Below, piece after piece: positions 1,485 to 12,504 of a DNA stretch of 64,000 nucleotides (positions are counted from its first letter, which is position 1; the number at the start of each line of letters is the position of its first letter). The translations under genes and the position numbers were made by a program. Under the pieces are notes generated by a model, which worked only from the letters and a program-made list of their open reading frames with translations, ran no database searches and was not told the origin of the DNA. This stretch comes from Tetramitus jugosus (Eukaryota; Protista; Heterolobosea). The stretch covers positions 372,001 to 436,000 of the forward strand of contig OW569366.1 of assembly GCA_937625935.1 (NCBI GenBank), written 5' to 3'.

Positions 1485-4400
1485 TTAGTGTTCATAAGCG
1501 TAGGAGAAGAGTCCCTTGTCCTTCTTTTGCTTCATTTGGATGAACTCTGGCTGCATGAGGAACGCAGACTTGTTCATACCAAACACCTTTTCAAACTCAG
1601 CATCAGACAAGTATTGCTCTCTCTTGTCACCCTTGACATCAGATGGAAGCTCGCTTGATTTCTTGTCCTTGAGTTCTGCGTACGTGTAGGTCTTCAGATT
1701 TTGTTGTTCAATCTGTGGGCCAGAAGCAGTCTTGGACTTTCCGGCAGTGTCAGTCAATGAGTCGAGCTTGGCTCTGAGCACAGGTGACACCATCTTTGAT
1801 TTCATTGCTTCGAACTTCTTGTCATCTTCATCTGCTTGAGATGGTTTCTTGCCCCATTTCTTGTCTCCTTCAGATGACTTTTGCCATGTTGGGATATACA
1901 TTGAGTCGAACTTTGGACCTTGAGTGGCGTAGGATGGCTTTGGTTGATCACCTCTTCTTTCAGCGGCCTTCAAGTAACTGCCAAAGTTCAATTCCCATGG
2001 ATTGACTCTGTTGTGAGCAAGACCCCATCTGGTCTGTTCAGTGAATCTGTGACCAACAAATTGAGCGTATGGAACTTCGAATTTCCATCCTCTTAGATTG
2101 TTGATGGCAATGACAGCTTCTCTCTTCTTTTCTCTGACTTCACTGGCAGATGCATTTGGATTTCTTCTTAACCAGTCAAGTAAATCTTCAGCGTAATCCT
2201 TTGCAGTTTGTCTGTCCTTTTCAGACATGGCTCTTCGCACATCCTTGTTATGTTCCAGAACCTTGAGAACCTTTTCGGCGTAATCCTTCAAGTCCTTGTG
2301 TGCATCTTGGTTATCCAGCATTTCGTCAATAAATCTCTTGAGTTCGTCACGCTTTCTGGCAACTGCTTCCTTGGTAGCATTTGGATTATCTTTCAACCAT
2401 TGTGCAATCTCGTCCAACTTCTTGTTAACAAGATTTTTCTGAGCGTCTGACAATGAAGCAAATCTATCATCATTCTTCAACATTTGTCTGTAGTCTGTCA
2501 ATTCTTTTTCAAGTTCCTTCATTAATCTACCACCAGAGAGAATTGGCAATGCAACCTTCTCGAGTTCCTTCTTCTTTGCCTCGATTTGTGCCTTGGATGC
2601 CTTCTTATTCTTTTCTAGCCAATCGACAGTATCTTTGCAAGCATTAATAATCTTTTCCTTGTCTTGCTTGGAGAGATTATCTCCCATCTCCTCAGTTTCT
2701 TGACTCAAGCTGTTTGCTAGACTCTTCAAGTCTCCGTGACTTTCAGCTCGCTCAACCAATGGTTGAATGACAGCTTCACCTTCCTGCTTCACTCTCTTGA
2801 TTTCAGCTACGGATGCGTTTGGATTTGCCTTCACCCAGTTTTCAAGCTCAGTACACTTATTATTGATGATTCTCTTCTCTTCATTGTCGAGAATAGACAT
2901 TCTATCATCCTTCAGCAGCTTGTTCTTTGTTTCTTGAGCGTAGTCAATAAGTTCCTTCTTTTGGTATCCTCTGGTGATTGTAGGGCTAATCTTTTCTTCG
3001 AGTTCCTTTCTCTTTCCAACAGTCTCCAGAAGTGGAGCATGCTTATTCTTTGATACCCAATCCAACGTCTTGTTGGCTGCGTCTCTAACTTCTCGCTTTT
3101 CAGCTTCAGAGAGATGATTGCCCAGAGTATCAATATCTTGCAGTGCCTCCTTAGCATAGTCTTCAAGCTTGTTCAGCTCATCAACTCTGTTAATGATAGG
3201 ATCTAATGCCTTGCGAATTTCCGCTTCCTTGTTGTGAAGTTCAGCCAAAGTAGCATCAGGGTTGTTCTTCTTCCATTTTGCAGCTTCTTCGAGCACTGTT
3301 CTGATTCGGTCGGCTTCTTCTCTCTTAAGCTTGGAATTGAAACGAGGGTCATTGTCGAGCTTATTCTTCACATCGTTCATGTAGTCTTCCATTTGTTTCT
3401 TCTTCTCAGCTCTATCCAAGATTGGTTTCAACTCCTTTTCGAGTTCACGCTTCTTCTGAAGAATTTCTGATTTCGAGGCAGTCTTTTCGTTTGCCTTCAA
3501 CCAGTCCATAACTTGCTTGGCTGTATCGACAACCTTTCTGGCTTCTTCCTGTGACAATTCATTCTTGAGTCTGGTGGCATCATCGATACACTTGGTGGAG
3601 TAATCCTTGAGGTCATTGGCGGCCTCTGCTCTTGATACAGCAGGGTTGACAGCTCTGTCATGAGCAGCTCTCTGCTTCTTGATATCCGAAACGGAGGAAT
3701 TTGGATTATTAGCAACCCAATTTTCAGTGTCAGCGCAATGTTTGGTCACATCGGATTGTTCCTTGTCAGTGAGAGCTGAGAGTTTGGAGTCTTGATCGAC
3801 TCGTCTCTTCAAATTGGCTGCATCATCTTCAAGCGCATTCAATTCGTCGATACGATCCATCATTGGTTTCAAAACACGATCCAACTGAGCTTTGTTGTGG
3901 TCAATTTGGGCCTTGTTTGCACTGTGCTTGTTCTTATCCAACCAAGCAAGGGACTCTTTGGCGGCATCACGAATCTTCTTCGTCTCAGCCTCACCCAGTC
4001 TTGATGTCAAACGACCATCTTCCTCTAATCTCTTCAGTGCATTCTCAGCAGTTTGCTTGAGAACTTGGCTGCTCTCAGCCTTATTCAACAGTGGTTCAAC
4101 AATATTCTTATAACTGGCATCCTTTTGGTTCAATTCCTTTGCTGAGGCGTTTGGATTCTTGGCCAAATAGTTGAGCATATCATCAGCGGCAGCAGTCAAG
4201 CGCTTCTTTTCGTCCTCTGTGAGTGCGAAGAGTGATGGATCATTTTGAACTCTATTCTTGATGTCCTTTGCATGATTTTCGAGCGATATTCTGTGGTCAG
4301 TCTTCTTAACTGTTGGCTCCACAATATTTTGCAGCTCTGCTCTCTTCTCATCGATCTCGCTGCTGCTCAAATTTGGATTGGCCTTTAGGTAGTTCAAAAC

Positions 4401-7400
4401 ATTTTCAGCACTTGCTGCAACTTGATCTCTCTCCTTTTGGCTTGAATGCTTGTTGAACATGTCATCAGAGTTCACTCTGTTCAAAAGATTTTGAGCTTCA
4501 GTGGTTAGGTTGTGTCTATTCTCAGCCTTCTTAACCAAAGGTTCAATAACATTCTCAGCATCCTTTCTCTTGGCCAATATTTCACCAGAGGTAGCATTTG
4601 GATTTTCATGCAACCACTTATTGACAGCTGCCAGTTTGTTGACAATCTGTTGCTTCTCTGCATCAGACAAGTTGGTCAACTTTTCATCTTCGTTCAATCT
4701 TCTGTTCATTTCATCGCAGTAGTCCTCCAAAGAATTCTTCTCTTCGACTCTCTTGATGATAGGTGTTGTCAAGGATTCGAAATGCTTCTTCTTCTTTTCA
4801 ATTTCATCAATAGATGCATTTGGATTCTTGTTCAGCCAATCTAAGCAATCGTCGCAAGCCTTTGCTAACTGTGATCTCTCAGCAGCTGACAGACCAGATT
4901 TCAATCTATAATCATCAGACAATCTGGATTGCAAATCAGCAACACTTTGTGCAAGAGCATGATGGTTCTCTGCTTTTGTTACAAGTGGGTCAATATTATC
5001 TTCGGCTTTGTGTTGTTCTTGAGTCATTTGTCCGATGGTGGCATTTGGATTCTTCGCCAAGAAACCTAGAGCATCATCCGCCTTCTTGTGAATGGCATCA
5101 CGCTCTTGCTTGCTGAGAGAAGACAATCGTTCATCAAATCTGACGTCATCTTGTGCATTCTCAGCGTAGACAGCCACATCACTTCTCTTCTCAGCTCTCT
5201 CAACAAGAGGATTGATAATCTTAGCCATTTGTTTTCTCTGCTTGTCCATATCTCCCTTGGAAGCAGCAGGATTCGACTTGGACCAATTGAGCAAATCATC
5301 GCATTGCTTCTTGATCAAGTTTCTTTCTTGGTCAGAAAGAGAGACGAGTCTCTTGTCCTCATCTACTCTTCTCTTCAAGGCAGAAATAGATTCATCAAAG
5401 TCATACTTGGACTCAGCACGGGTCATCAAAGGATCAACAATGTTGTTCAAATCTTGGTGCTTCTTCAAGATATCGGATAGAGAGCTCTTTGGATTCTGTT
5501 CAATCCACTTGAGCGTGTCATCGCATTGTGAAATAATTTGGTTGCGTTCTTGGTCGCTCAAAGAAGCGTACTTTGGATCATTCAACACTCTCTTCTTGAT
5601 GTCGTTCGCATGATCAACGAGGGCATTCTTAGCATCGACACGGTCAATGATTGGTTTCACTTCCTCCAACTTGCGGAGTGCTTGTTGAATTTCTTCAGTT
5701 GTAGCGTCAGGATTCTGCTTCAAGAACTCGATTGCGTTCTCTGCAGCATCACGAATCTTGTTCTTTTCATCATGTGACAAATTGTTAAAGAGTTTGTGAT
5801 CATTGTTCACTCTGTGAAGGTATTCATTGGCTTTGGTTAGCAACTCATCTGCCTTACCAACCTTGTTGAACAATGGTTCAATCACGTCTTGAGCTTCACG
5901 CAAAACGGCAATGGCCTTTGCTGTGTCAACGAGTTCATCTGCCAATCCATCTCTGCTCTTGGCTGCCAATTTTTCTGCAATGGCTCTCTTTTCGGCAATC
6001 TCCTTTTCGAGTTGCTTCTTTTCACTTTCTGACAAATGGACCATCTTTGGATCATTATTATATCTGTTAGTCACGTCGTCAATGTATTCGATCAAATTGT
6101 TGATTGCGTCACCCTTGTTTACAATTGGTACAACTGCAGATTCAAACACATCCTTTGCACGCAGTAATTCCTTTTCTGTCATATCCTTGTTTTGAAGCTT
6201 CTTAACCAGGTCATCACAAGCATCAATGATATTCCTCTTGTCCTTCTCACTTAATGAATGAGCAAACTCACCATTGTTCAAGCGCTTCTTCAGATCTCTG
6301 ACGTGATCTTCCAAATCACCACGCAAGTCAACTCGTGAGAGAATATCGGAAGTGTTGGCGATCAGTTCATTCTGCTTCTTGGCCATTTCAGAGATCTTGG
6401 CATCTGGGTTCTTGTTCATCCAATTGATAACATCATCACATTGTTGTAAGATGTGAGTTTTATCAGCATCGGAAAGACCGGCCAATCTTCTATCGTTGTA
6501 AACTCTATTTCTCATATTTGAAACAAAGTCTTCGAGTTCAGTCTTCTTCTCAGCACGGGTAATAATTGGATCAATAACATGGCTCATCTTCTCCTTTTCA
6601 GCGAGAATTTCAGCGGCAGAAGCATTTGGATTCTTCTCCAAGAATGACAAGGCATTGTCACAGGCGATTTCAATTTTTCTCTTCTCGTCTTGTGACAAGT
6701 TATTGGCGAGTCTGGCATCTTCGTTGAGTCTTCTGCGCAAATTCATAACTTCATCTCTCAAGTTGGATGCATATTCTGCTTTGTTAACAAGAGGATCCAC
6801 AACACGCTCAGCTCTTCTCTTCTGTTCAGAGATTTCGGCAAAGTTTGCATTTGGGTTACGTTTCAAGAAATCAAGAGCATCTTGGCAAGCGTCTCTAATT
6901 TGTTTCTGCTCTTCCTTGCTGAGAGATGCAAGTCTCGGATCATCTTCGACTCTTCTCTTCATTGAGCGGCAGTATTCTTCAAGTTCGACAATCTTGTCTG
7001 CTCTCTTGACAATATCATCAATATCCTTCTTCATGTCCTTCTCAATCTGATCTACATCAGCATCAGGATCTGCCAATGAATCTTGCACACGCTTATGTAC
7101 ACGCTCCAATTTCTGTCTATCAGATTCGAGAAGAGCAGCCAAGTAGGCACCACCTCTCATACGATCTCTAATGCCATTGATGGCATCACGAAGTTCGTTT
7201 CTTCTCTCAACCTTTCTGAGTGCTGGATCACCAACGGCCTTCAATTGATCTCTCTTTCCCTTAATCTCGTCTAACCAAGATGTAGGATTCTTTACTGACC
7301 AATCAATTGTTTCGTTGGCCTTGTCGACAACATTTTGCTTCTCACGATTTTTGATAGAATTTGCCAATAGAGGATCTTGAAGCATGTGTCTCTTAAAATC

Positions 7401-10400
7401 TCTTGACAACTCTTCTAGATCATCCAAGGCATTGAGACGATCCACAATTGGTTTGACATTTTCGTCGTACTTCATTTGTAGCTTGGCAAGATCATCGAGA
7501 GTGGCATTAGGGTTGTTTCTGAGGAAATCAAGAATTTCGTCACAAGTGTCTTCGATTAACTTTCTTTCCTTGTCACTTAAGTTGGCAAATCTGTCATCGT
7601 TCTTCAAGGCTCTCTTCAAAGCAGAAGCCGTATCTTCCAAAGTCTTGCGGGTTTCAGCTGTATGAACAATAGGATCGATGATATTGTGCACCTTATTGAG
7701 TTGTTCCTTCAATTCATCCAAAGAGGCGTTTGGATTCTTGGCCAACCAATCAGCAGAATCATCCAACGCCTTTTGAATGAGCTTACGATCAGCATCGGAC
7801 ATTGAGAGCAATGCAGGATCCTCTTGCAATCTCTTTCTCATTCCACTAATCAGATCAGTCAACTCCTTCTTCTTGGCCAAACGACCTAGAATTGGTGCGA
7901 CAGCATCTTCGAGTTCACGTCGCTTTTGATCAATTTCAGCAGCAGATGCATTAGGATTCTTATTCAACCAATCAACGTTTTGATCACAGCCGAAAAGAAT
8001 GGTGTTTCTTTCATCATCTGTCAATTGACGCAAGAGCTTATCATCATCGTTCACGAAATCTCTCAACATTTGATCTCTATTATTGAAGCGTTGGAGAGCT
8101 TCAGCAGCATCGCTGGATGGTTTGGATACAACGTCATCTTCCCAGATGAAGTCTTCATCATCAACACCTCGGCGAGTCTTGTGCTTGTAAGCCTCCTCCA
8201 TCTTTTGTTTCATGGCTTCTTGTTCAGCGAGCAACTTCTTCTTCTCTTCTTGCTCTCTCTTAATACGCTCAGCTTCTCTCTGCATTTCTTCTTCTGCCTC
8301 TTGTCTGAGTCTTTCTTGCTCACGCAACTGTCTCTCTTCTTCCTCCTTGCGTTTTGCTTCTTCTTCTGCCTTCTTCTTCTCTTCTTCAATTCTTCTTTGT
8401 TCTTCTTCCTCTCTTCTTCTTTCTTCTTCTCTTTGTTTTCTTTCTTCTTCGAGTCTCTTGGCACGAGCTTCTCTTTCCTTTCTGTCTGCCTCTTCTCTTG
8501 CCTCGTCTTCTTCCTTTTGACGTTGGGCATTGATTGCTCTGTTGTGATTGACAGCTGCAGGGTCTTCTGCCTGGAGTCTGGCCAATCTTCTAGCAATGTT
8601 CAGTGGTCCAGCAGCGATCAGAACCTTACCCTTTGGAAGATCATCTTCCTCGCCATGTTCGCCCAAACCGAAACGGTGATCTCTTGGCTTATCATTAACC
8701 TGAACGTTAGGTTCATATTCACCTCTTATCTGTTTGGTTGGCGGAACTTCAGCTTCAGCCTTCTCGAGAGCATCTTGATACTCTTCATCGGAAATAGTTC
8801 TTTCTGCTTCGCTCTTTGGTGGATTCTTACCGCCACTCATTGCATTCAATAGTGGTTTCAAAGCACCCAAGTTCTTCAAGATAGCCTTGTTCTTAGGATC
8901 AACAGATGACATATTCCACAAAGCACCGGCAGCATTAGACTGAATGGCCTGATTTGGATGTGAAAGACATGCGACCAAACCTCTGATACCATCTTTCTCT
9001 CTAATCTCAGTACAAACTTTCTTACTGGCTGAAATGTTCAAGAAACATGCAGTTGTCTTCTCCAAAATGTTCTCGCTATTATGACCCAAGAAATTCTTGA
9101 TCAACAATTCGACGACACCACTCTCAACCGTGTCATCTGCAGTGTCTTTGTCATAACCAAGAACGGCAACAGAGATCACAGCAAACAAGCTCAATTTGGC
9201 CTTCTTTGGATGCTTCAAGCATGGCTTCAAGCTATCAAATCCATTCATGCTTCTAAAGTCTTCTGAAACAGCAGGATTACTTCCGAGAGTCAACAAGGCA
9301 CCACAAACCTTTTCCATCACTTCAGTGTTGCCTTGATTGGCATCCAAAAAGTTCAGAATCTTTTCTACGATTCCCATCTTTTGGAATTCGTCCTTGTTCT
9401 GAGGTGTATGAGACAAGTTCCATACAGCAGCAATTGCAGCAGTTGCAACACCATTGTCAGGGTCTTCATCCTCGTTGAAATAGTCTACCAAATCGGCCAC
9501 TAGGTTCAATCCATCCACATCTTTCACCAACTCTCCTACCTTGCGACTAGCAGACATGACAGACAAGGCCATCAACAAATTAGAGAGTGTTTCTGGTTGA
9601 TGATCGTCCTCTTGCTTCAACAGATTCACGATTTGATCCACTGCACCAGCCATACTCAACGCTTCTCTCACTGGATCACCGCAGGATGACATGTTCCAAA
9701 CAGCACCTGCCGTTCTCACAATCACATCCTCATCACCACTCTCCAAGCATTCAATAATGCGATAGAATTGATCAATTTGCATCAATTGATCCACAATCCC
9801 TGCACTCAACACCAATGCGGCAAACGCACCCATCGTATTCTTTTGCACTTCAATATTTTGAACATGGAAACAATCATACATGATTCGAACACCATCGAAT
9901 CTCTTGTCCGATATTTGATCTCTCGCTTCATCACTATCACTGAGATTCATCACTGCACCGACCAGATTTTCAATGGTTCTCTCAATGTTCTCCTTTCGTG
10001 CTGGAGTGAGCTGAACAACAACCTTGTTCTCCTCTTCTTCACTTGCACCACCAATGCCCAACTGATTCAACAAAATATCCAAATGTCTCAACAGTTTTGG
10101 TACGGCTCCACTCTGCACAATTTGATCTCTACCTTCAGGCTCAATCGCCATATTCAACAATCCTCCTGCAGCAGTCTTTACAATCTCTTCCAACAATTGT
10201 CTCATTTGAGAAGAGAGATTGCTCTTTTCTTGTTCGTCAAATGTGTCCAAACAGTTGACAACGGGAGGGATACATCCCATCTTGTACAATTCAGTTCTTG
10301 CTTCAACATCGGCCGACATGCTAGAAATGCTGTTCAAGGCAGACAATCGCTTGTTCAAGTCACTGGATTGTGACAGGTTTTGGAACAGGTCAGAATTTGC

Positions 10401-10409
10401 ACTAGACAT
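1485..10409 (-). CDS. Giant 2974-aa protein: ARM repeats + charged single-alpha-helix + 27 Hsp70-lid-like repeats + villin headpiece
   Basis: Uninterrupted ORF with first ATG at 10409. ARM motifs (AAGGLLNMA, TAGAVWNMS, AAGALWNMS), an E/R/K-rich segment, 27 units of about 74 aa (LSxxEKxxIxxxxDxxLxWLxxNPNASxxEIxxKxxELxxxVxPI), and C-terminal REQYLSDAEFEKVFGMNKSAF...KKDKGLF. Confidence 0.9.
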   Translation of the reverse strand: MSSANSDLFQNLSQSSDLNKRLSALNSISSMSADVEARTELYKMGCIPPVVNCLDTFDEQEKSNLSSQMRQLLEEIVKTAAGGLLNMAIEPEGRDQIVQSGAVPKLLRHLDILLNQLGIGGASEEEENKVVVQLTPARKENIERTIENLVGAVMNLSDSDEARDQISDKRFDGVRIMYDCFHVQNIEVQKNTMGAFAALVLSAGIVDQLMQIDQFYRIIECLESGDEDVIVRTAGAVWNMSSCGDPVREALSMAGAVDQIVNLLKQEDDHQPETLSNLLMALSVMSASRKVGELVKDVDGLNLVADLVDYFNEDEDPDNGVATAAIAAVWNLSHTPQNKDEFQKMGIVEKILNFLDANQGNTEVMEKVCGALLTLGSNPAVSEDFRSMNGFDSLKPCLKHPKKAKLSLFAVISVAVLGYDKDTADDTVESGVVELLIKNFLGHNSENILEKTTACFLNISASKKVCTEIREKDGIRGLVACLSHPNQAIQSNAAGALWNMSSVDPKNKAILKNLGALKPLLNAMSGGKNPPKSEAERTISDEEYQDALEKAEAEVPPTKQIRGEYEPNVQVNDKPRDHRFGLGEHGEEDDLPKGKVLIAAGPLNIARRLARLQAEDPAAVNHNRAINAQRQKEEDEAREEADRKEREARAKRLEEERKQREEERRREEEEQRRIEEEKKKAEEEAKRKEEEERQLREQERLRQEAEEEMQREAERIKREQEEKKKLLAEQEAMKQKMEEAYKHKTRRGVDDEDFIWEDDVVSKPSSDAAEALQRFNNRDQMLRDFVNDDDKLLRQLTDDERNTILFGCDQNVDWLNKNPNASAAEIDQKRRELEDAVAPILGRLAKKKELTDLISGMRKRLQEDPALLSMSDADRKLIQKALDDSADWLAKNPNASLDELKEQLNKVHNIIDPIVHTAETRKTLEDTASALKRALKNDDRFANLSDKERKLIEDTCDEILDFLRNNPNATLDDLAKLQMKYDENVKPIVDRLNALDDLEELSRDFKRHMLQDPLLANSIKNREKQNVVDKANETIDWSVKNPTSWLDEIKGKRDQLKAVGDPALRKVERRNELRDAINGIRDRMRGGAYLAALLESDRQKLERVHKRVQDSLADPDADVDQIEKDMKKDIDDIVKRADKIVELEEYCRSMKRRVEDDPRLASLSKEEQKQIRDACQDALDFLKRNPNANFAEISEQKRRAERVVDPLVNKAEYASNLRDEVMNLRRRLNEDARLANNLSQDEKRKIEIACDNALSFLEKNPNASAAEILAEKEKMSHVIDPIITRAEKKTELEDFVSNMRNRVYNDRRLAGLSDADKTHILQQCDDVINWMNKNPDAKISEMAKKQNELIANTSDILSRVDLRGDLEDHVRDLKKRLNNGEFAHSLSEKDKRNIIDACDDLVKKLQNKDMTEKELLRAKDVFESAVVPIVNKGDAINNLIEYIDDVTNRYNNDPKMVHLSESEKKQLEKEIAEKRAIAEKLAAKSRDGLADELVDTAKAIAVLREAQDVIEPLFNKVGKADELLTKANEYLHRVNNDHKLFNNLSHDEKNKIRDAAENAIEFLKQNPDATTEEIQQALRKLEEVKPIIDRVDAKNALVDHANDIKKRVLNDPKYASLSDQERNQIISQCDDTLKWIEQNPKSSLSDILKKHQDLNNIVDPLMTRAESKYDFDESISALKRRVDEDKRLVSLSDQERNLIKKQCDDLLNWSKSNPAASKGDMDKQRKQMAKIINPLVERAEKRSDVAVYAENAQDDVRFDERLSSLSKQERDAIHKKADDALGFLAKNPNATIGQMTQEQHKAEDNIDPLVTKAENHHALAQSVADLQSRLSDDYRLKSGLSAAERSQLAKACDDCLDWLNKNPNASIDEIEKKKKHFESLTTPIIKRVEEKNSLEDYCDEMNRRLNEDEKLTNLSDAEKQQIVNKLAAVNKWLHENPNATSGEILAKRKDAENVIEPLVKKAENRHNLTTEAQNLLNRVNSDDMFNKHSSQKERDQVAASAENVLNYLKANPNLSSSEIDEKRAELQNIVEPTVKKTDHRISLENHAKDIKNRVQNDPSLFALTEDEKKRLTAAADDMLNYLAKNPNASAKELNQKDASYKNIVEPLLNKAESSQVLKQTAENALKRLEEDGRLTSRLGEAETKKIRDAAKESLAWLDKNKHSANKAQIDHNKAQLDRVLKPMMDRIDELNALEDDAANLKRRVDQDSKLSALTDKEQSDVTKHCADTENWVANNPNSSVSDIKKQRAAHDRAVNPAVSRAEAANDLKDYSTKCIDDATRLKNELSQEEARKVVDTAKQVMDWLKANEKTASKSEILQKKRELEKELKPILDRAEKKKQMEDYMNDVKNKLDNDPRFNSKLKREEADRIRTVLEEAAKWKKNNPDATLAELHNKEAEIRKALDPIINRVDELNKLEDYAKEALQDIDTLGNHLSEAEKREVRDAANKTLDWVSKNKHAPLLETVGKRKELEEKISPTITRGYQKKELIDYAQETKNKLLKDDRMSILDNEEKRIINNKCTELENWVKANPNASVAEIKRVKQEGEAVIQPLVERAESHGDLKSLANSLSQETEEMGDNLSKQDKEKIINACKDTVDWLEKNKKASKAQIEAKKKELEKVALPILSGGRLMKELEKELTDYRQMLKNDDRFASLSDAQKNLVNKKLDEIAQWLKDNPNATKEAVARKRDELKRFIDEMLDNQDAHKDLKDYAEKVLKVLEHNKDVRRAMSEKDRQTAKDYAEDLLDWLRRNPNASASEVREKKREAVIAINNLRGWKFEVPYAQFVGHRFTEQTRWGLAHNRVNPWELNFGSYLKAAERRGDQPKPSYATQGPKFDSMYIPTWQKSSEGDKKWGKKPSQADEDDKKFEAMKSKMVSPVLRAKLDSLTDTAGKSKTASGPQIEQQNLKTYTYAELKDKKSSELPSDVKGDKREQYLSDAEFEKVFGMNKSAFLMQPEFIQMKQKKDKGLFSYAYEH
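2090..8090 (-). repeat. Coding tandem array of 27 units of about 222 bp (Hsp70 C-terminal lid-like helical bundle)
   Basis: Counted 27 recurrences of the (W/F/Y)LxxNPxA...PI core in the translation; three units are degenerate. Boundaries are approximate. Confidence 0.85.
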
Positions 10410-10629: not shown

Positions 10630-12504
10630 TTAGCATCGCAAGATATGCTGGGCATGTTCAATGGCATCATTGATGTAGGTTTCCAATTTTTGTAGGTCCA
10701 CTCTGCAATCTCTGTCTCTCAATCGTTCAAACATTCTAAAGTTCAATCCTTCACTGCTTGTGAGTTCTGCTGTTAACCTTGTGTCATGATCAAATTCCAT
10801 GTAGTCAGAATCACCCTCGCAGTTGTCCAAGGGTATGTTGTATCTCCAATATCTCAATCCGACGAGCTCAGCAATACCAAAGTACAAGTTGTCGTGGATG
10901 GATTCGTGCTGTAACATGACAGCAGTCGATCCCAAAGGATTCATCCACAATAAGTGTGTAAATGTAGCGCCATACATACTTACGAACACCACACCAGGTC
11001 TTGAAAGTGCATGGATTTGTTCCAATGGAGTCATTGCTCCAAAATCAACGAAGTGAACATATTTCGCATACTTGTACATGCCACGGTTCGAAAAGTATTC
11101 CTCCACATCTTTTTGATTAATGATTTGTCTACCTCTGATAATATTTCCTGAACTTCTTGAAGAAATATAAACTATAGGTTCAACAATGGCAGAGGGAGTA
11201 AGGTATCTTTGCACAAGGGAATCTGTTAACAATGGAGGTATGTTCTGTCTGACAAAGGAGGAAAACAATCGGAAGTATCTCCTCTTTGTTCCAGAATATT
11301 CTGACTTGCTTTCTAGGAACAGAGGTAAATACATTCTGTTTGATACACCTACTACCACTCGCCGGAAACATGACTTTGTTTTACCTTCGGTTAGATCTTT
11401 CAATAGAGTGATGGGACTGTCAGAGAACAAGTTCAGTAAGAATTTTTCTGGGAAGTGATCACTATCGAAATCAGTGTTAGGTTTCAGTAGAGCAATCTGT
11501 ATTCGATTTTTCCTCATCCTCATATTTTCAAAATCGAACAACTCGGGTGCTGAATCCATGATACTGGCAAAGAGAGTTAGTATAGCACCATGAATGCTAT
11601 GATACAAGTTGTACCTCTGATCGGTGCTCATTGCATATCTATCATAGATGAAAGTAGTTCGTTCGATCATTTTCTTACAACCTTTCTCGTCGTAAATGGA
11701 GCTAGTGGGTACAATGTAGTTGGGGCTAAGGCCTCCTCCACCTTTCTCCAGTGCAGAACAATACGGGAGCGTTAAGGGATGCCGTTGAAAGGTAGGAAAT
11801 GTCTTTGAGTGGATTGTATTGGTTGAGAACCTTGGTATTTGTTTGAATTGGAAATGTTCTGGTGCATGAAACATGATAAAATAGTCTTTTCCTCTATGAA
11901 CAACAGTCACATTCTGGATCACGCAGTACCGATTTTCATGATATTGACAGTTTCTTGTCATTATCTTGCTAGAAATGCAATCAACAATAGATGAAGGTTT
12001 CGAACTCTCACTCCAAACATAGTTTGTGCATTGACAAGAATCAGAAGAATATGGTCCATCTGGATCCATGTTTCTATACTGCCATTCGGAACGATTGCAT
12101 ATGCTTAACTTACTTACTGGAATCTGTGTTTTCGGCTGACCAAACTTGTAAGCTAGAGGACAGTTCCTGTGTTTTAACCCAAGTTTACTGTCTATTCCCC
12201 TTGTGATCGGCAGTGATGGACTGACGGCTGTCTCCTCTATTGTCGCTTCTACTTTCACTTGAATTTCGTCTCTTTTAGCTATTGGTTCAGCATTAACAAC
12301 ATCTGGCACTTTCGAAATTTCATTTTCTACACATCTTCCCTTGAAGGAACGAAACCAGAAGAGCGTATTGAGCAACAACAATGACATCAAGAGAACGATG
12401 AATAGTTTTGTTGAAAGCTTTGAGAGTGGCCAACAAGAAGCTACTTGATCTTTTCTACTCTTGCCATTATTCATGCATTGTTGTTGTTGTTGTTTCAGTC
12501 TCAT
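10630..12504 (-). CDS. Type II membrane glycosyltransferase, GT61 family (EOGT/xylosyltransferase-like)
   Basis: N-terminal TM anchor; YNLYH, CFRRVVVG, GRQIIN, MTPLEQI and the HGA-equivalent motif SMYGATFTHLLWM. Confidence 0.75.
   Translation of the reverse strand: MRLKQQQQQCMNNGKSRKDQVASCWPLSKLSTKLFIVLLMSLLLLNTLFWFRSFKGRCVENEISKVPDVVNAEPIAKRDEIQVKVEATIEETAVSPSLPITRGIDSKLGLKHRNCPLAYKFGQPKTQIPVSKLSICNRSEWQYRNMDPDGPYSSDSCQCTNYVWSESSKPSSIVDCISSKIMTRNCQYHENRYCVIQNVTVVHRGKDYFIMFHAPEHFQFKQIPRFSTNTIHSKTFPTFQRHPLTLPYCSALEKGGGGLSPNYIVPTSSIYDEKGCKKMIERTTFIYDRYAMSTDQRYNLYHSIHGAILTLFASIMDSAPELFDFENMRMRKNRIQIALLKPNTDFDSDHFPEKFLLNLFSDSPITLLKDLTEGKTKSCFRRVVVGVSNRMYLPLFLESKSEYSGTKRRYFRLFSSFVRQNIPPLLTDSLVQRYLTPSAIVEPIVYISSRSSGNIIRGRQIINQKDVEEYFSNRGMYKYAKYVHFVDFGAMTPLEQIHALSRPGVVFVSMYGATFTHLLWMNPLGSTAVMLQHESIHDNLYFGIAELVGLRYWRYNIPLDNCEGDSDYMEFDHDTRLTAELTSSEGLNFRMFERLRDRDCRVDLQKLETYINDAIEHAQHILRC

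What the first reader, a model, noticed from the sequence alone, without database searches (positions are those of the whole stretch)
1485..10409. Giant spectrin-like protein whose rod is 27 tandem Hsp70 lid domains, capped by ARM repeats and a villin headpiece
Seen: ARM region (~8840-10400), E/R/K-rich helix (~8190-8520), 27 units of about 74 aa (~2090-8090) and a C-terminal headpiece ending KKDKGLF. Established: the Hsp70/BiP C-terminal lid follows the pattern R...N.LESY...LK......KLS..DK..I..A.....WL......A....F..K.KELE....PI and normally occurs once, after the ATPase and beta-sandwich domains. Unit 25 here (ERAESHGDLKSLANSL...DNLSKQDKEKIINACKDTVDWLEKNKKASKAQIEAKKKELEKVALPIL) fits it closely, yet the protein has no Hsp70 ATPase or substrate-binding domain. 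Units abut so that the last helix of one runs into the first helix of the next, as in spectrin repeats. Inference: a chaperone sub-domain has been co-opted as the building block of an elastic rod tethering an ARM-bound partner to F-actin, convergent with dystrophin or spectraplakins. I know of no described protein with this architecture.
Basis: partly seen in the sequence, partly recalled or inferred. Interest (0 to 1): 0.92.

Follow-up and report, generated by a model that had tools for sequence, protein, structure and literature searches.

The report
Giant rod of Hsp70 lid repeats
A soil amoeba and its relatives, including Naegleria fowleri, make a giant protein whose long rod is built from 22 to 39 copies of the small helical 'lid' of the Hsp70 chaperone, apparently a chaperone part reused as a spectrin-like strut for the actin skeleton.

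Summary
Confirmed. Window 1485-10409 (-) is one stop-free, single-copy ORF of 2974 aa. It holds about 11 ARM repeats, a 115-aa E/R/K helix, 27 abutting ~74-aa units, a disordered tail with a conserved RWG...GSYL motif, and a villin headpiece. The units are homologues of the eukaryotic Hsp70/BiP C-terminal lid: the top 16 PDB profile hits are all Hsp70s (E 2e-17 to 5e-11), an Hsp70-only profile finds 25 of 27 units, spectrin does not align and FIVAR is weak. AlphaFold (pLDDT 96) joins units through shared 41-residue helices, the spectrin-like principle. The core is kept and Hsp70-specific surface residues are lost, which points to structural co-option. Full-length orthologues in Willaertia and two Naegleria species have 22 units; Acrasis has a partial one; a metagenomic contig has at least 39. 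The N. fowleri orthologue is detected in trophozoite proteomics. Lid arrays also arose independently elsewhere. No description found in 10 literature searches. Function as an ARM-to-actin strut is inferred, not shown: the headpiece has W64F and K65I, and elasticity is untested. The scan had noted this only on the same DNA. The genome is probably Tetramitus jugosus.

The parts
1485..10409 (-). Whole gene: single ORF, 2974 aa, about 339 kDa, single copy in the genome
8805..10382 (-). ARM-repeat head, aa ~10-535, about 11 repeats with a conserved W/L-N ladder; about 32% identical to the Naegleria/Willaertia heads; no specific known ARM family assigned
8520..8804 (-). Linker, aa 536-630, partly conserved (a GEHGEE-like motif and a short hydrophobic stretch before the charged helix)
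8175..8519 (-). E/R/K-rich segment, aa 631-745, with the composition of a single alpha-helix; 70-100 aa equivalents in all full-length orthologues
   Evidence: local computation only
2079..8099 (-). Rod: 27 contiguous Hsp70-lid-homologous three-helix units (aa 771-2777) joined by shared 41-residue helices; weak A/B alternation; unit 10 has an insertion; unit 27 is the positionally conserved terminal unit
1947..2096 (-). Conserved motif straight after the last unit (FEVP...RWG...GSYL; RWG at aa 2794, GSYL at 2810); RWG and GSY invariant in 9 orthologous tails and 2 small headpiece proteins of this genome
1698..2078 (-). Predicted disordered tail, aa 2778-2904 (pLDDT under 50)
1506..1697 (-). 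Villin headpiece (full HP67-type domain); villin W64 is F, K65 is I, K70 and F76 are kept
1488..1505 (-). Six-residue C-terminal extension beyond the headpiece's last Phe, aromatic and acidic, present in all 9 orthologous tails and absent from the other six headpieces of this genome

Best explanation
A heterolobosean-specific giant cytoskeletal linker. SHOWN: its rod descends from the C-terminal three-helix lid of a eukaryotic (cytosolic or ER) Hsp70. An in-frame duplication joined the lid's last helix to the next lid's first helix, so that helix D of unit n replaces the N-terminal half of Hsp70 helix B in unit n+1 and forms one 41-residue shared helix (predicted with high confidence). The array has since grown and turned over by lineage (22, 23, 27, at least 39 units), keeping the hydrophobic core and helix caps and losing Hsp70-specific surface residues. 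INFERRED: the rod is a passive strut or ruler, about 3 nm per unit and about 85 nm for 27 units if straight, extended by a ~17-nm single alpha-helix. The ARM head grips an extended peptide on a membrane or organelle partner, and the headpiece with the disordered RWG...GSYL tail holds F-actin. The protein would thus tie the actin cortex to a membrane or organelle at a set distance, like dystrophin or the spectraplakins but with non-homologous repeats, in amoebae that lack interphase microtubules.
For: PDB profile search: 16 of 16 top hits are Hsp70/BiP lids, best non-Hsp70 hit E 0.11. Hsp70-only HMM finds 25/27 units at >=15 bits and none in the reversed rod. hhalign 98.6% and 97.9% to this genome's own cytosolic Hsp70 and BiP lids, 0.1% to its alpha-actinin spectrin repeat. 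Model pLDDT 96.2 with four 41-residue shared helices; best structural matches are Hsp70 lids, Z 11.6-12.5, rmsd 1.4-1.8 A over one unit, and BiP 529-629 aligns over 100 residues across a unit junction. Core kept, N540/E543/F547-equivalents lost. Same domain order in five full-length orthologues. N. fowleri orthologue A0A6A5BE73 detected in trophozoite secretome proteomics beside actin and a CH-domain protein (PMC12089049). Naegleria amoebae lack interphase microtubules (PMC7594500). This genome gives one Pfam spectrin-repeat match, an alpha-actinin-like ORF (a lower bound). An unrelated contig couples lid-like units to a CH actin-binding head (P0064).
Against: No binding, localisation or mechanical data exist. 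The headpiece keeps 2 of the 4 villin bundling residues in this species (W64F, K65I) and F76 is no longer terminal. The ARM ligand is unknown; its nearest hits (ARMC4, Vac8, SmgGDS, ARMC8) are generic. Proteomic rank is by unique peptides, which favours large proteins.
Confidence: 0.55

Rival explanations
1. An actin-independent spacer or self-assembling filament: the headpiece has been repurposed, and the RWG...GSYL motif or the C-terminal aromatic extension binds the ARM groove of the same or a neighbouring molecule (autoinhibition or head-to-tail polymer). The two small RWG-headpiece proteins would be adaptors for the same site.
For: W64 is replaced throughout the family and in both small RWG proteins, while four other headpieces of this genome keep W-K. 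RWG and GSY are invariant yet lie in a region predicted disordered, as binding motifs do. The ARM W-N ladder is conserved.
Against: K70, F76, the REQYLS segment and (in most orthologues) K65 are conserved over the whole family, and W to F is conservative. No direct evidence of self-association.
Confidence: 0.2
2. The lid array keeps a chaperone-related role: a multivalent platform or decoy for Hsp70 partners (ATP-state Hsp70 NBD, CHIP, J-proteins), or a holdase, which the headpiece parks on actin.
For: Units remain clearly recognisable as Hsp70 lids. CHIP has been solved bound to the Hsc70 lid-tail (4kbq). Some independent arrays are still attached to an Hsp70 (P0021, Styela proteins).
Against: The positions nearly invariant only in Hsp70 lids (N 95%, E 97%, Y/F 92%, K 92%, E 95%) fall to 30% or less in the repeats. 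No EEVD or HDEL tail, no NBD, no beta-sandwich. Units are only 27% identical and their number varies.
Confidence: 0.1
3. A flagellar-apparatus fibre protein (rootlet or basal-body connector) of the flagellate stage.
For: The best PDB match of the ARM head is ODAD2/ARMC4 (E 9e-11). These amoeboflagellates build a striated rootlet (PMC2111796).
Against: The ARM match covers about 200 aa and is generic. The Naegleria rootlet protein is 170 kDa and is made de novo during differentiation, whereas the orthologue is 299 kDa and is found in trophozoite cultures. A headpiece points to actin.
Confidence: 0.1
4. The likeness to Hsp70 is convergent and the units are FIVAR/GA-type or generic three-helix bundles.
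For: Single units hit FIVAR (3 of 26, best E 1.5e-4) and DUF1542 (1, E 5e-6) in Pfam. Ebh and Embp appear at Z 8.3-8.6.
Against: FIVAR units score 10-12 bits against 60-66 for Hsp70 lids; hhalign 64% against 98-99%. Motifs match Hsp70 column by column. P0050 shows a fresh lid duplication with the same junction.
Confidence: 0.03

Closest known systems
Eukaryotic Hsp70/BiP C-terminal alpha-helical lid (SBD-alpha 10-kDa subdomain; PDB 2lmg, 2p32, 4kbq, 6asy)
   Same: Homologous sequence and fold: one unit superposes at 1.4-1.8 A; hydrophobic core, L[ST]xxEK cap, WLxxN and P-I motifs are shared.
   Different: 27 copies in a chain instead of one; no NBD, beta-sandwich or EEVD/HDEL; Hsp70-specific surface residues lost; fused to ARM repeats and a headpiece.
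Spectrin superfamily (spectrin, dystrophin, alpha-actinin, spectraplakins)
   Same: Long chain of three-helix bundles joined by a shared helix, between two different binding ends, one probably for actin.
   Different: Repeat is 74 aa, not about 106 aa (length from own knowledge; the Pfam model has 105 positions); no sequence similarity; headpiece instead of CH domains; ARM head.
Staphylococcal Ebh/Embp (FIVAR-GA) and EzrA rods
   Same: Tandem short three-helix bundles forming a rod; they appear among the structural neighbours (Z 7-8.6).
   Different: Bacterial; weak sequence match only; the overall path differs (rmsd 16-25 A over long alignments).
Headpiece proteins without gelsolin repeats (dematin, abLIM type)
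   Same: C-terminal HP67-type headpiece preceded by a disordered segment.
   Different: W64 replaced, six-residue C-terminal extension, 2000-aa rod and ARM head.
Hsp110/Grp170 (Sse1, HYOU1)
   Same: Hsp70 relatives with more than one lid-like bundle (this genome's Hsp110-like ORF gives two matches).
   Different: They keep the NBD and act as chaperones; few bundles, not a contiguous long array.

Membership tests
Hsp70 chaperones | Actin-like ATPase domain | tested here: not met
   No HSP70 or MreB match for the full protein in Pfam; PDB hits cover only the lid
Hsp70 chaperones | Beta-sandwich peptide-binding subdomain | tested here: not met
   No match; the models of the rod are all-helical
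Hsp70 chaperones | Alpha-helical lid | tested here: met
   27 homologous units
Hsp70 chaperones | C-terminal EEVD or H/KDEL tail | tested here: not met
   The protein ends in a headpiece plus six residues
Spectrin superfamily | Spectrin repeat (PF00435) | tested here: not met
   No Pfam hit in the protein; the genome-wide PF00435 search misses this gene; hhalign 0.1%
Spectrin superfamily | N-terminal CH actin-binding domains | tested here: not met
   The N-terminus is ARM repeats
Spectrin superfamily | Tandem three-helix bundles joined by a shared helix | tested here: met
   Predicted: four 41-residue shared helices in five units, pLDDT 96
Spectrin superfamily | Elastic rod that links actin to membranes | not testable with these tools
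   Needs force spectroscopy, electron microscopy and localisation
Villin/headpiece proteins | Headpiece domain | tested here: met
   PF02209 E 3e-11; villin HP67 E 9e-10
Villin/headpiece proteins | F-actin residues W64, K65, K70, F76 (human W815, K816, K821, F827; PMC7525818) | tested here: inconclusive
   F, I, K, F here; F, K/R, K, F in most orthologues; F76 not terminal
Villin/headpiece proteins | Gelsolin repeats (villin proper) | tested here: not met
   None in Pfam
FIVAR/GA (Ebh, Embp) | Sequence match to FIVAR/GA repeats | tested here: not met
   Only 3 of 26 units hit FIVAR weakly; 10-12 bits per FIVAR unit against 60-66 for lids
ARM-repeat proteins | Tandem armadillo repeats with a conserved W/N ladder | tested here: met
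ARM-repeat proteins | Orthology to a named ARM family (ARMC4, Vac8, SmgGDS, catenins, importin-alpha) | tested here: inconclusive
   Only partial, generic matches; no tree built

The most novel reading that the evidence does not exclude
The Hsp70 lid is an unrecognised free-standing repeat module that eukaryotes have polymerised into rods several times. In Heterolobosea it builds the main long-range cortical linker, a non-homologous replacement for spectrin or dystrophin in amoebae without interphase microtubules, with unit number setting a spacing of about 70-120 nm.
Probability: 0.3. Interest if true: 0.88.

Novelty: new variant of a known kind. Interest (0 to 1): 0.74.

Why it matters
It is an unusually clear case of a sub-domain of a universal chaperone becoming the repeat of a giant structural protein. 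Donor and product are still alignable, and independent arrays of different ages are available for comparison (a four-copy array with nearly identical units, Hsp70s with seven or more lids, the old 22-39-copy family). That makes the question of how helical-bundle repeat rods arise from globular proteins directly testable. It also gives a concrete candidate for long-range cortical scaffolding in Heterolobosea, whose amoebae lack interphase microtubules. The orthologue is a real, expressed 299-kDa protein in N. fowleri that databases label only 'HP domain-containing protein', and one metagenomic orthologue is mislabelled DnaK.

Tried and rejected
Transcript continuity is therefore untested. RNA runs hold 61-78% of the gene's sampled words, which shows presence only. 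(2) Chance, low complexity or misassembly: rejected (74-aa period, units only 27% identical, only short DNA-level matches of 23-90 nt, same order in five other genomes). (3) Spectrin or FIVAR identity: rejected. (4) The 170-kDa Naegleria rootlet protein: size and stage do not fit. (5) Donor paralogue, cytosolic Hsp70 or BiP: unresolved. The BiP profile scores higher in all orthologues, this genome's cytosolic lid scores higher in hhalign, and the 76-column tree has little resolution (five insert-bearing units were left out). No DnaK appears in the PDB profile hits. (6) The Hsp70 lids used for the reverse HMM were picked from hits to the repeat profile, so that test is partly circular; the PDB search is not. 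(7) Hidden in-frame introns in two N-terminal inserts: none possible in the first, weak candidates only in the second. (8) Ten literature searches found no description of the protein or the repeat; the only mention by accession is a proteomics table. The 'villin-1' upregulated in virulent N. fowleri (PMC4082629) cannot be tied to this gene. (9) No expression data by stage were found. (10) Neighbouring genes are unrelated.
Full report
1. Observation. The - strand ORF from ATG 10409 to stop 1485 encodes 2974 aa (about 339 kDa) without internal stops. Pfam finds armadillo repeats and a villin headpiece, and no HSP70 or spectrin family. Autocorrelation peaks at 74 aa, and a unit HMM tiles 27 abutting units from aa 771 to 2777 (window 2079-8099) with 27% mean identity. 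Residues 631-745 are 69% E/R/K with charge pairs peaking at i+3/i+4 and few hydrophobics, the signature of a single alpha-helix. The gene is single-copy; the only other matches to the unit profile in the genome are Hsp70-family genes. The assembly (26.35 Mb, 56 contigs) fits Tetramitus jugosus CCAP 1588/3C (26.3 Mb, 55 scaffolds plus mitochondrion; PMC11106597). That identification is inferred from size and from the relatives found.

2. The units are Hsp70 lids. A 26-unit profile against PDB sequences returns 16 eukaryotic Hsp70/BiP lids at E 2e-17 to 5e-11, aligned over the whole unit; the first non-Hsp70 hit is at E 0.11 and no DnaK is listed. A profile built only from Hsp70 lids finds 25 of 27 units at 15 bits or more and nothing in the reversed rod (partly circular in how the lids were chosen). 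hhalign gives 98.6% and 97.9% to this genome's cytosolic Hsp70 and BiP lids, 64% to the best-matching FIVAR protein's unit and 0.1% to the genome's own spectrin repeat. AlphaFold on five units gives pLDDT 96.2 and pTM 0.79, with a 20-residue middle helix and four 41-residue helices that each span the last helix of one unit and the first of the next. The best structural matches are Hsp70 lids (Z 11.6-12.5, rmsd 1.4-1.8 A over one unit). BiP 529-629 aligns over 100 residues across a junction, so the preceding unit's last helix takes the place of the N-terminal half of Hsp70 helix B. Ebh, Embp and EzrA follow at Z 7-8.6 with large rmsd. Z of about 12 alone is not decisive for helical bundles; the sequence evidence carries the claim. 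Column by column, the repeats keep the core and caps but lose positions nearly invariant in Hsp70 lids, such as the N540, E543 and F547 equivalents. From my own knowledge these lie on the helix-B face that closes over the beta-sandwich; the paper I read places N540-E543 in helix B but does not confirm that contact.

3. Family. Five full-length orthologues have the same order of domains: Willaertia magna KAL9651896.1, N. lovaniensis KAG2381860.1, N. fowleri KAF0976163.1 and one ENA protein with 22 units each, and a metagenomic one with 23, labelled DnaK. Acrasis kona KAL0479471.1 is a C-terminal piece with 10 units and the tail. A metagenomic contig holds at least 39 units before the family tail. 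Units are collinear between Willaertia and Naegleria (39-70% identity). Between deeper lineages the last unit keeps its place (SH-aLRT 96) while most others do not, and 12 units of this protein form their own group (96). The A/B alternation noted earlier by the scan (s1-551141) is weak but real here (permutation p = 0.001; even units are often one residue shorter in the first loop, with a Pro) and absent from four orthologues. This suggests re-expansion of a two-unit block in this lineage. Among the best 150 matches in 1.84 billion representatives, the long contiguous arrays with this tail that carry a name are heterolobosean; protists are thinly sampled, so the range is a lower bound.

4. Lid arrays arose more than once. 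P0050 ends in four nearly identical lids joined in the same register and nested among true Hsp70 lids. P0021 is an Hsp70 fragment with seven lids. Styela clava Hsp70s carry many spaced lid-like units. P0018 has LRRs plus eight units and P0064 a CH actin-binding head plus about 11.

5. The ends. The ARM head is conserved (about 32% identity) with a W/L-N ladder, but matches to ARMC4, Vac8, SmgGDS and ARMC8 are partial and generic. After the last unit comes a conserved motif with invariant RWG and GSY, inside about 130 residues predicted disordered. The same motif occurs twice in each of two small headpiece proteins of this genome, a lead from s1-545524 that I confirmed. The headpiece aligns to villin HP67 without gaps. 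Of the four residues needed for bundling by villin (W815, K816, K821, F827; PMC7525818), this protein has F, I, K, F and most orthologues F, K/R, K, F, always followed by six more residues. F-actin binding is plausible but not assured.

6. Expression. Soil metatranscriptomes and an oligo-dT run hold 61-78% of the gene's sampled words. The N. fowleri orthologue (A0A6A5BE73) was identified in trophozoite secretome samples of two isolates with 23 and 9 unique peptides, beside actin, EF1-alpha and a CH-domain protein (PMC12089049). The paper's Table 1 calls this list conditioned medium while its supplement files the same rows under vesicles, and peptide counts favour large proteins.

7. Mechanism. 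Most likely (0.55) a strut between an ARM-bound partner and F-actin. Naegleria amoebae lack interphase microtubules (PMC7594500), and this genome shows only one spectrin-repeat match, which leaves room for such a linker. Rivals: actin-independent spacer or head-to-tail polymer (0.2), retained chaperone-partner platform (0.1), flagellar fibre (0.1; the known rootlet protein is 170 kDa and differentiation-specific), convergent bundles (0.03). Elasticity is untested.

8. Novelty. It is not an Hsp70, a spectrin, a villin or a FIVAR protein by their defining features, but it probably works like a spectrin-family linker. Ten full-text searches found no description of the protein or of tandem Hsp70-lid rods; the library omits most subscription papers, and automatic domain annotation may already flag the repeats (not checked). 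Verdict: new variant of a known kind, interest 0.74.

Noticed in passing
L017:1501-2046 (-) and L019:1411-1986 (+) (G000 C48, C28): Two small (181 and 191 aa) headpiece proteins, each with two copies of the RWG...GSYL motif found once in the giant protein's tail. Relatives of L019 were found only in metagenomes.
   Followed up: partly
L071:1-8832 (JGI 3300030532, 28% GC): At least 39 contiguous lid units followed by the family tail motif, cut at the 5' end. Five frame changes were not convincingly explained as introns.
   Followed up: partly
P0050 / L060:2-3388: Predicted multi-pass membrane protein ending in four nearly identical, abutting Hsp70 lids with the same junction register; a recent independent duplication.
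   Followed up: partly
P0021; Styela clava XP_077967405.1, XP_039268143.1, XP_039268132.1, XP_077966879.1: Hsp70s or Hsp70 fragments followed by several to many extra lid-like units with spacers; independent animal expansions.
   Followed up: partly
P0018, P0019, P0069 (EukProt and JGI): LRR plus 8 contiguous lid units, and relatives. The units resemble the heterolobosean type, suggesting reuse in a second architecture; organism not identified.
   Followed up: partly
P0064 / L072:71-5182 (Logan SRR30197293): CH actin-binding head, about 11 lid-like units (11-40 bits) and a cytidylyltransferase-like domain in one 1703-aa ORF.
   Followed up: partly
P0024 / L057:3001-11847: 2948-aa protein with 17 spaced lid-like units (period about 91 aa) between coiled-coil ends, no Pfam family, on a gene-dense 33% GC contig.
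   Followed up: no
L049:1414-3030 (-) (G000 C40): 538-aa Hsp70 that appears to lack most of its beta-sandwich but keeps the ATPase domain and lid.
   Followed up: no
window 10630-12504 (-) and L059:24855-26348: A GT61 glycosyltransferase lies near this gene in both this genome and N. fowleri, on different sides; probably chance.
   Followed up: no
L059:10001-18351 (N. fowleri): The orthologue's introns all lie in the 5' ARM part; one 2290-codon exon carries the whole rod and headpiece.
   Followed up: yes
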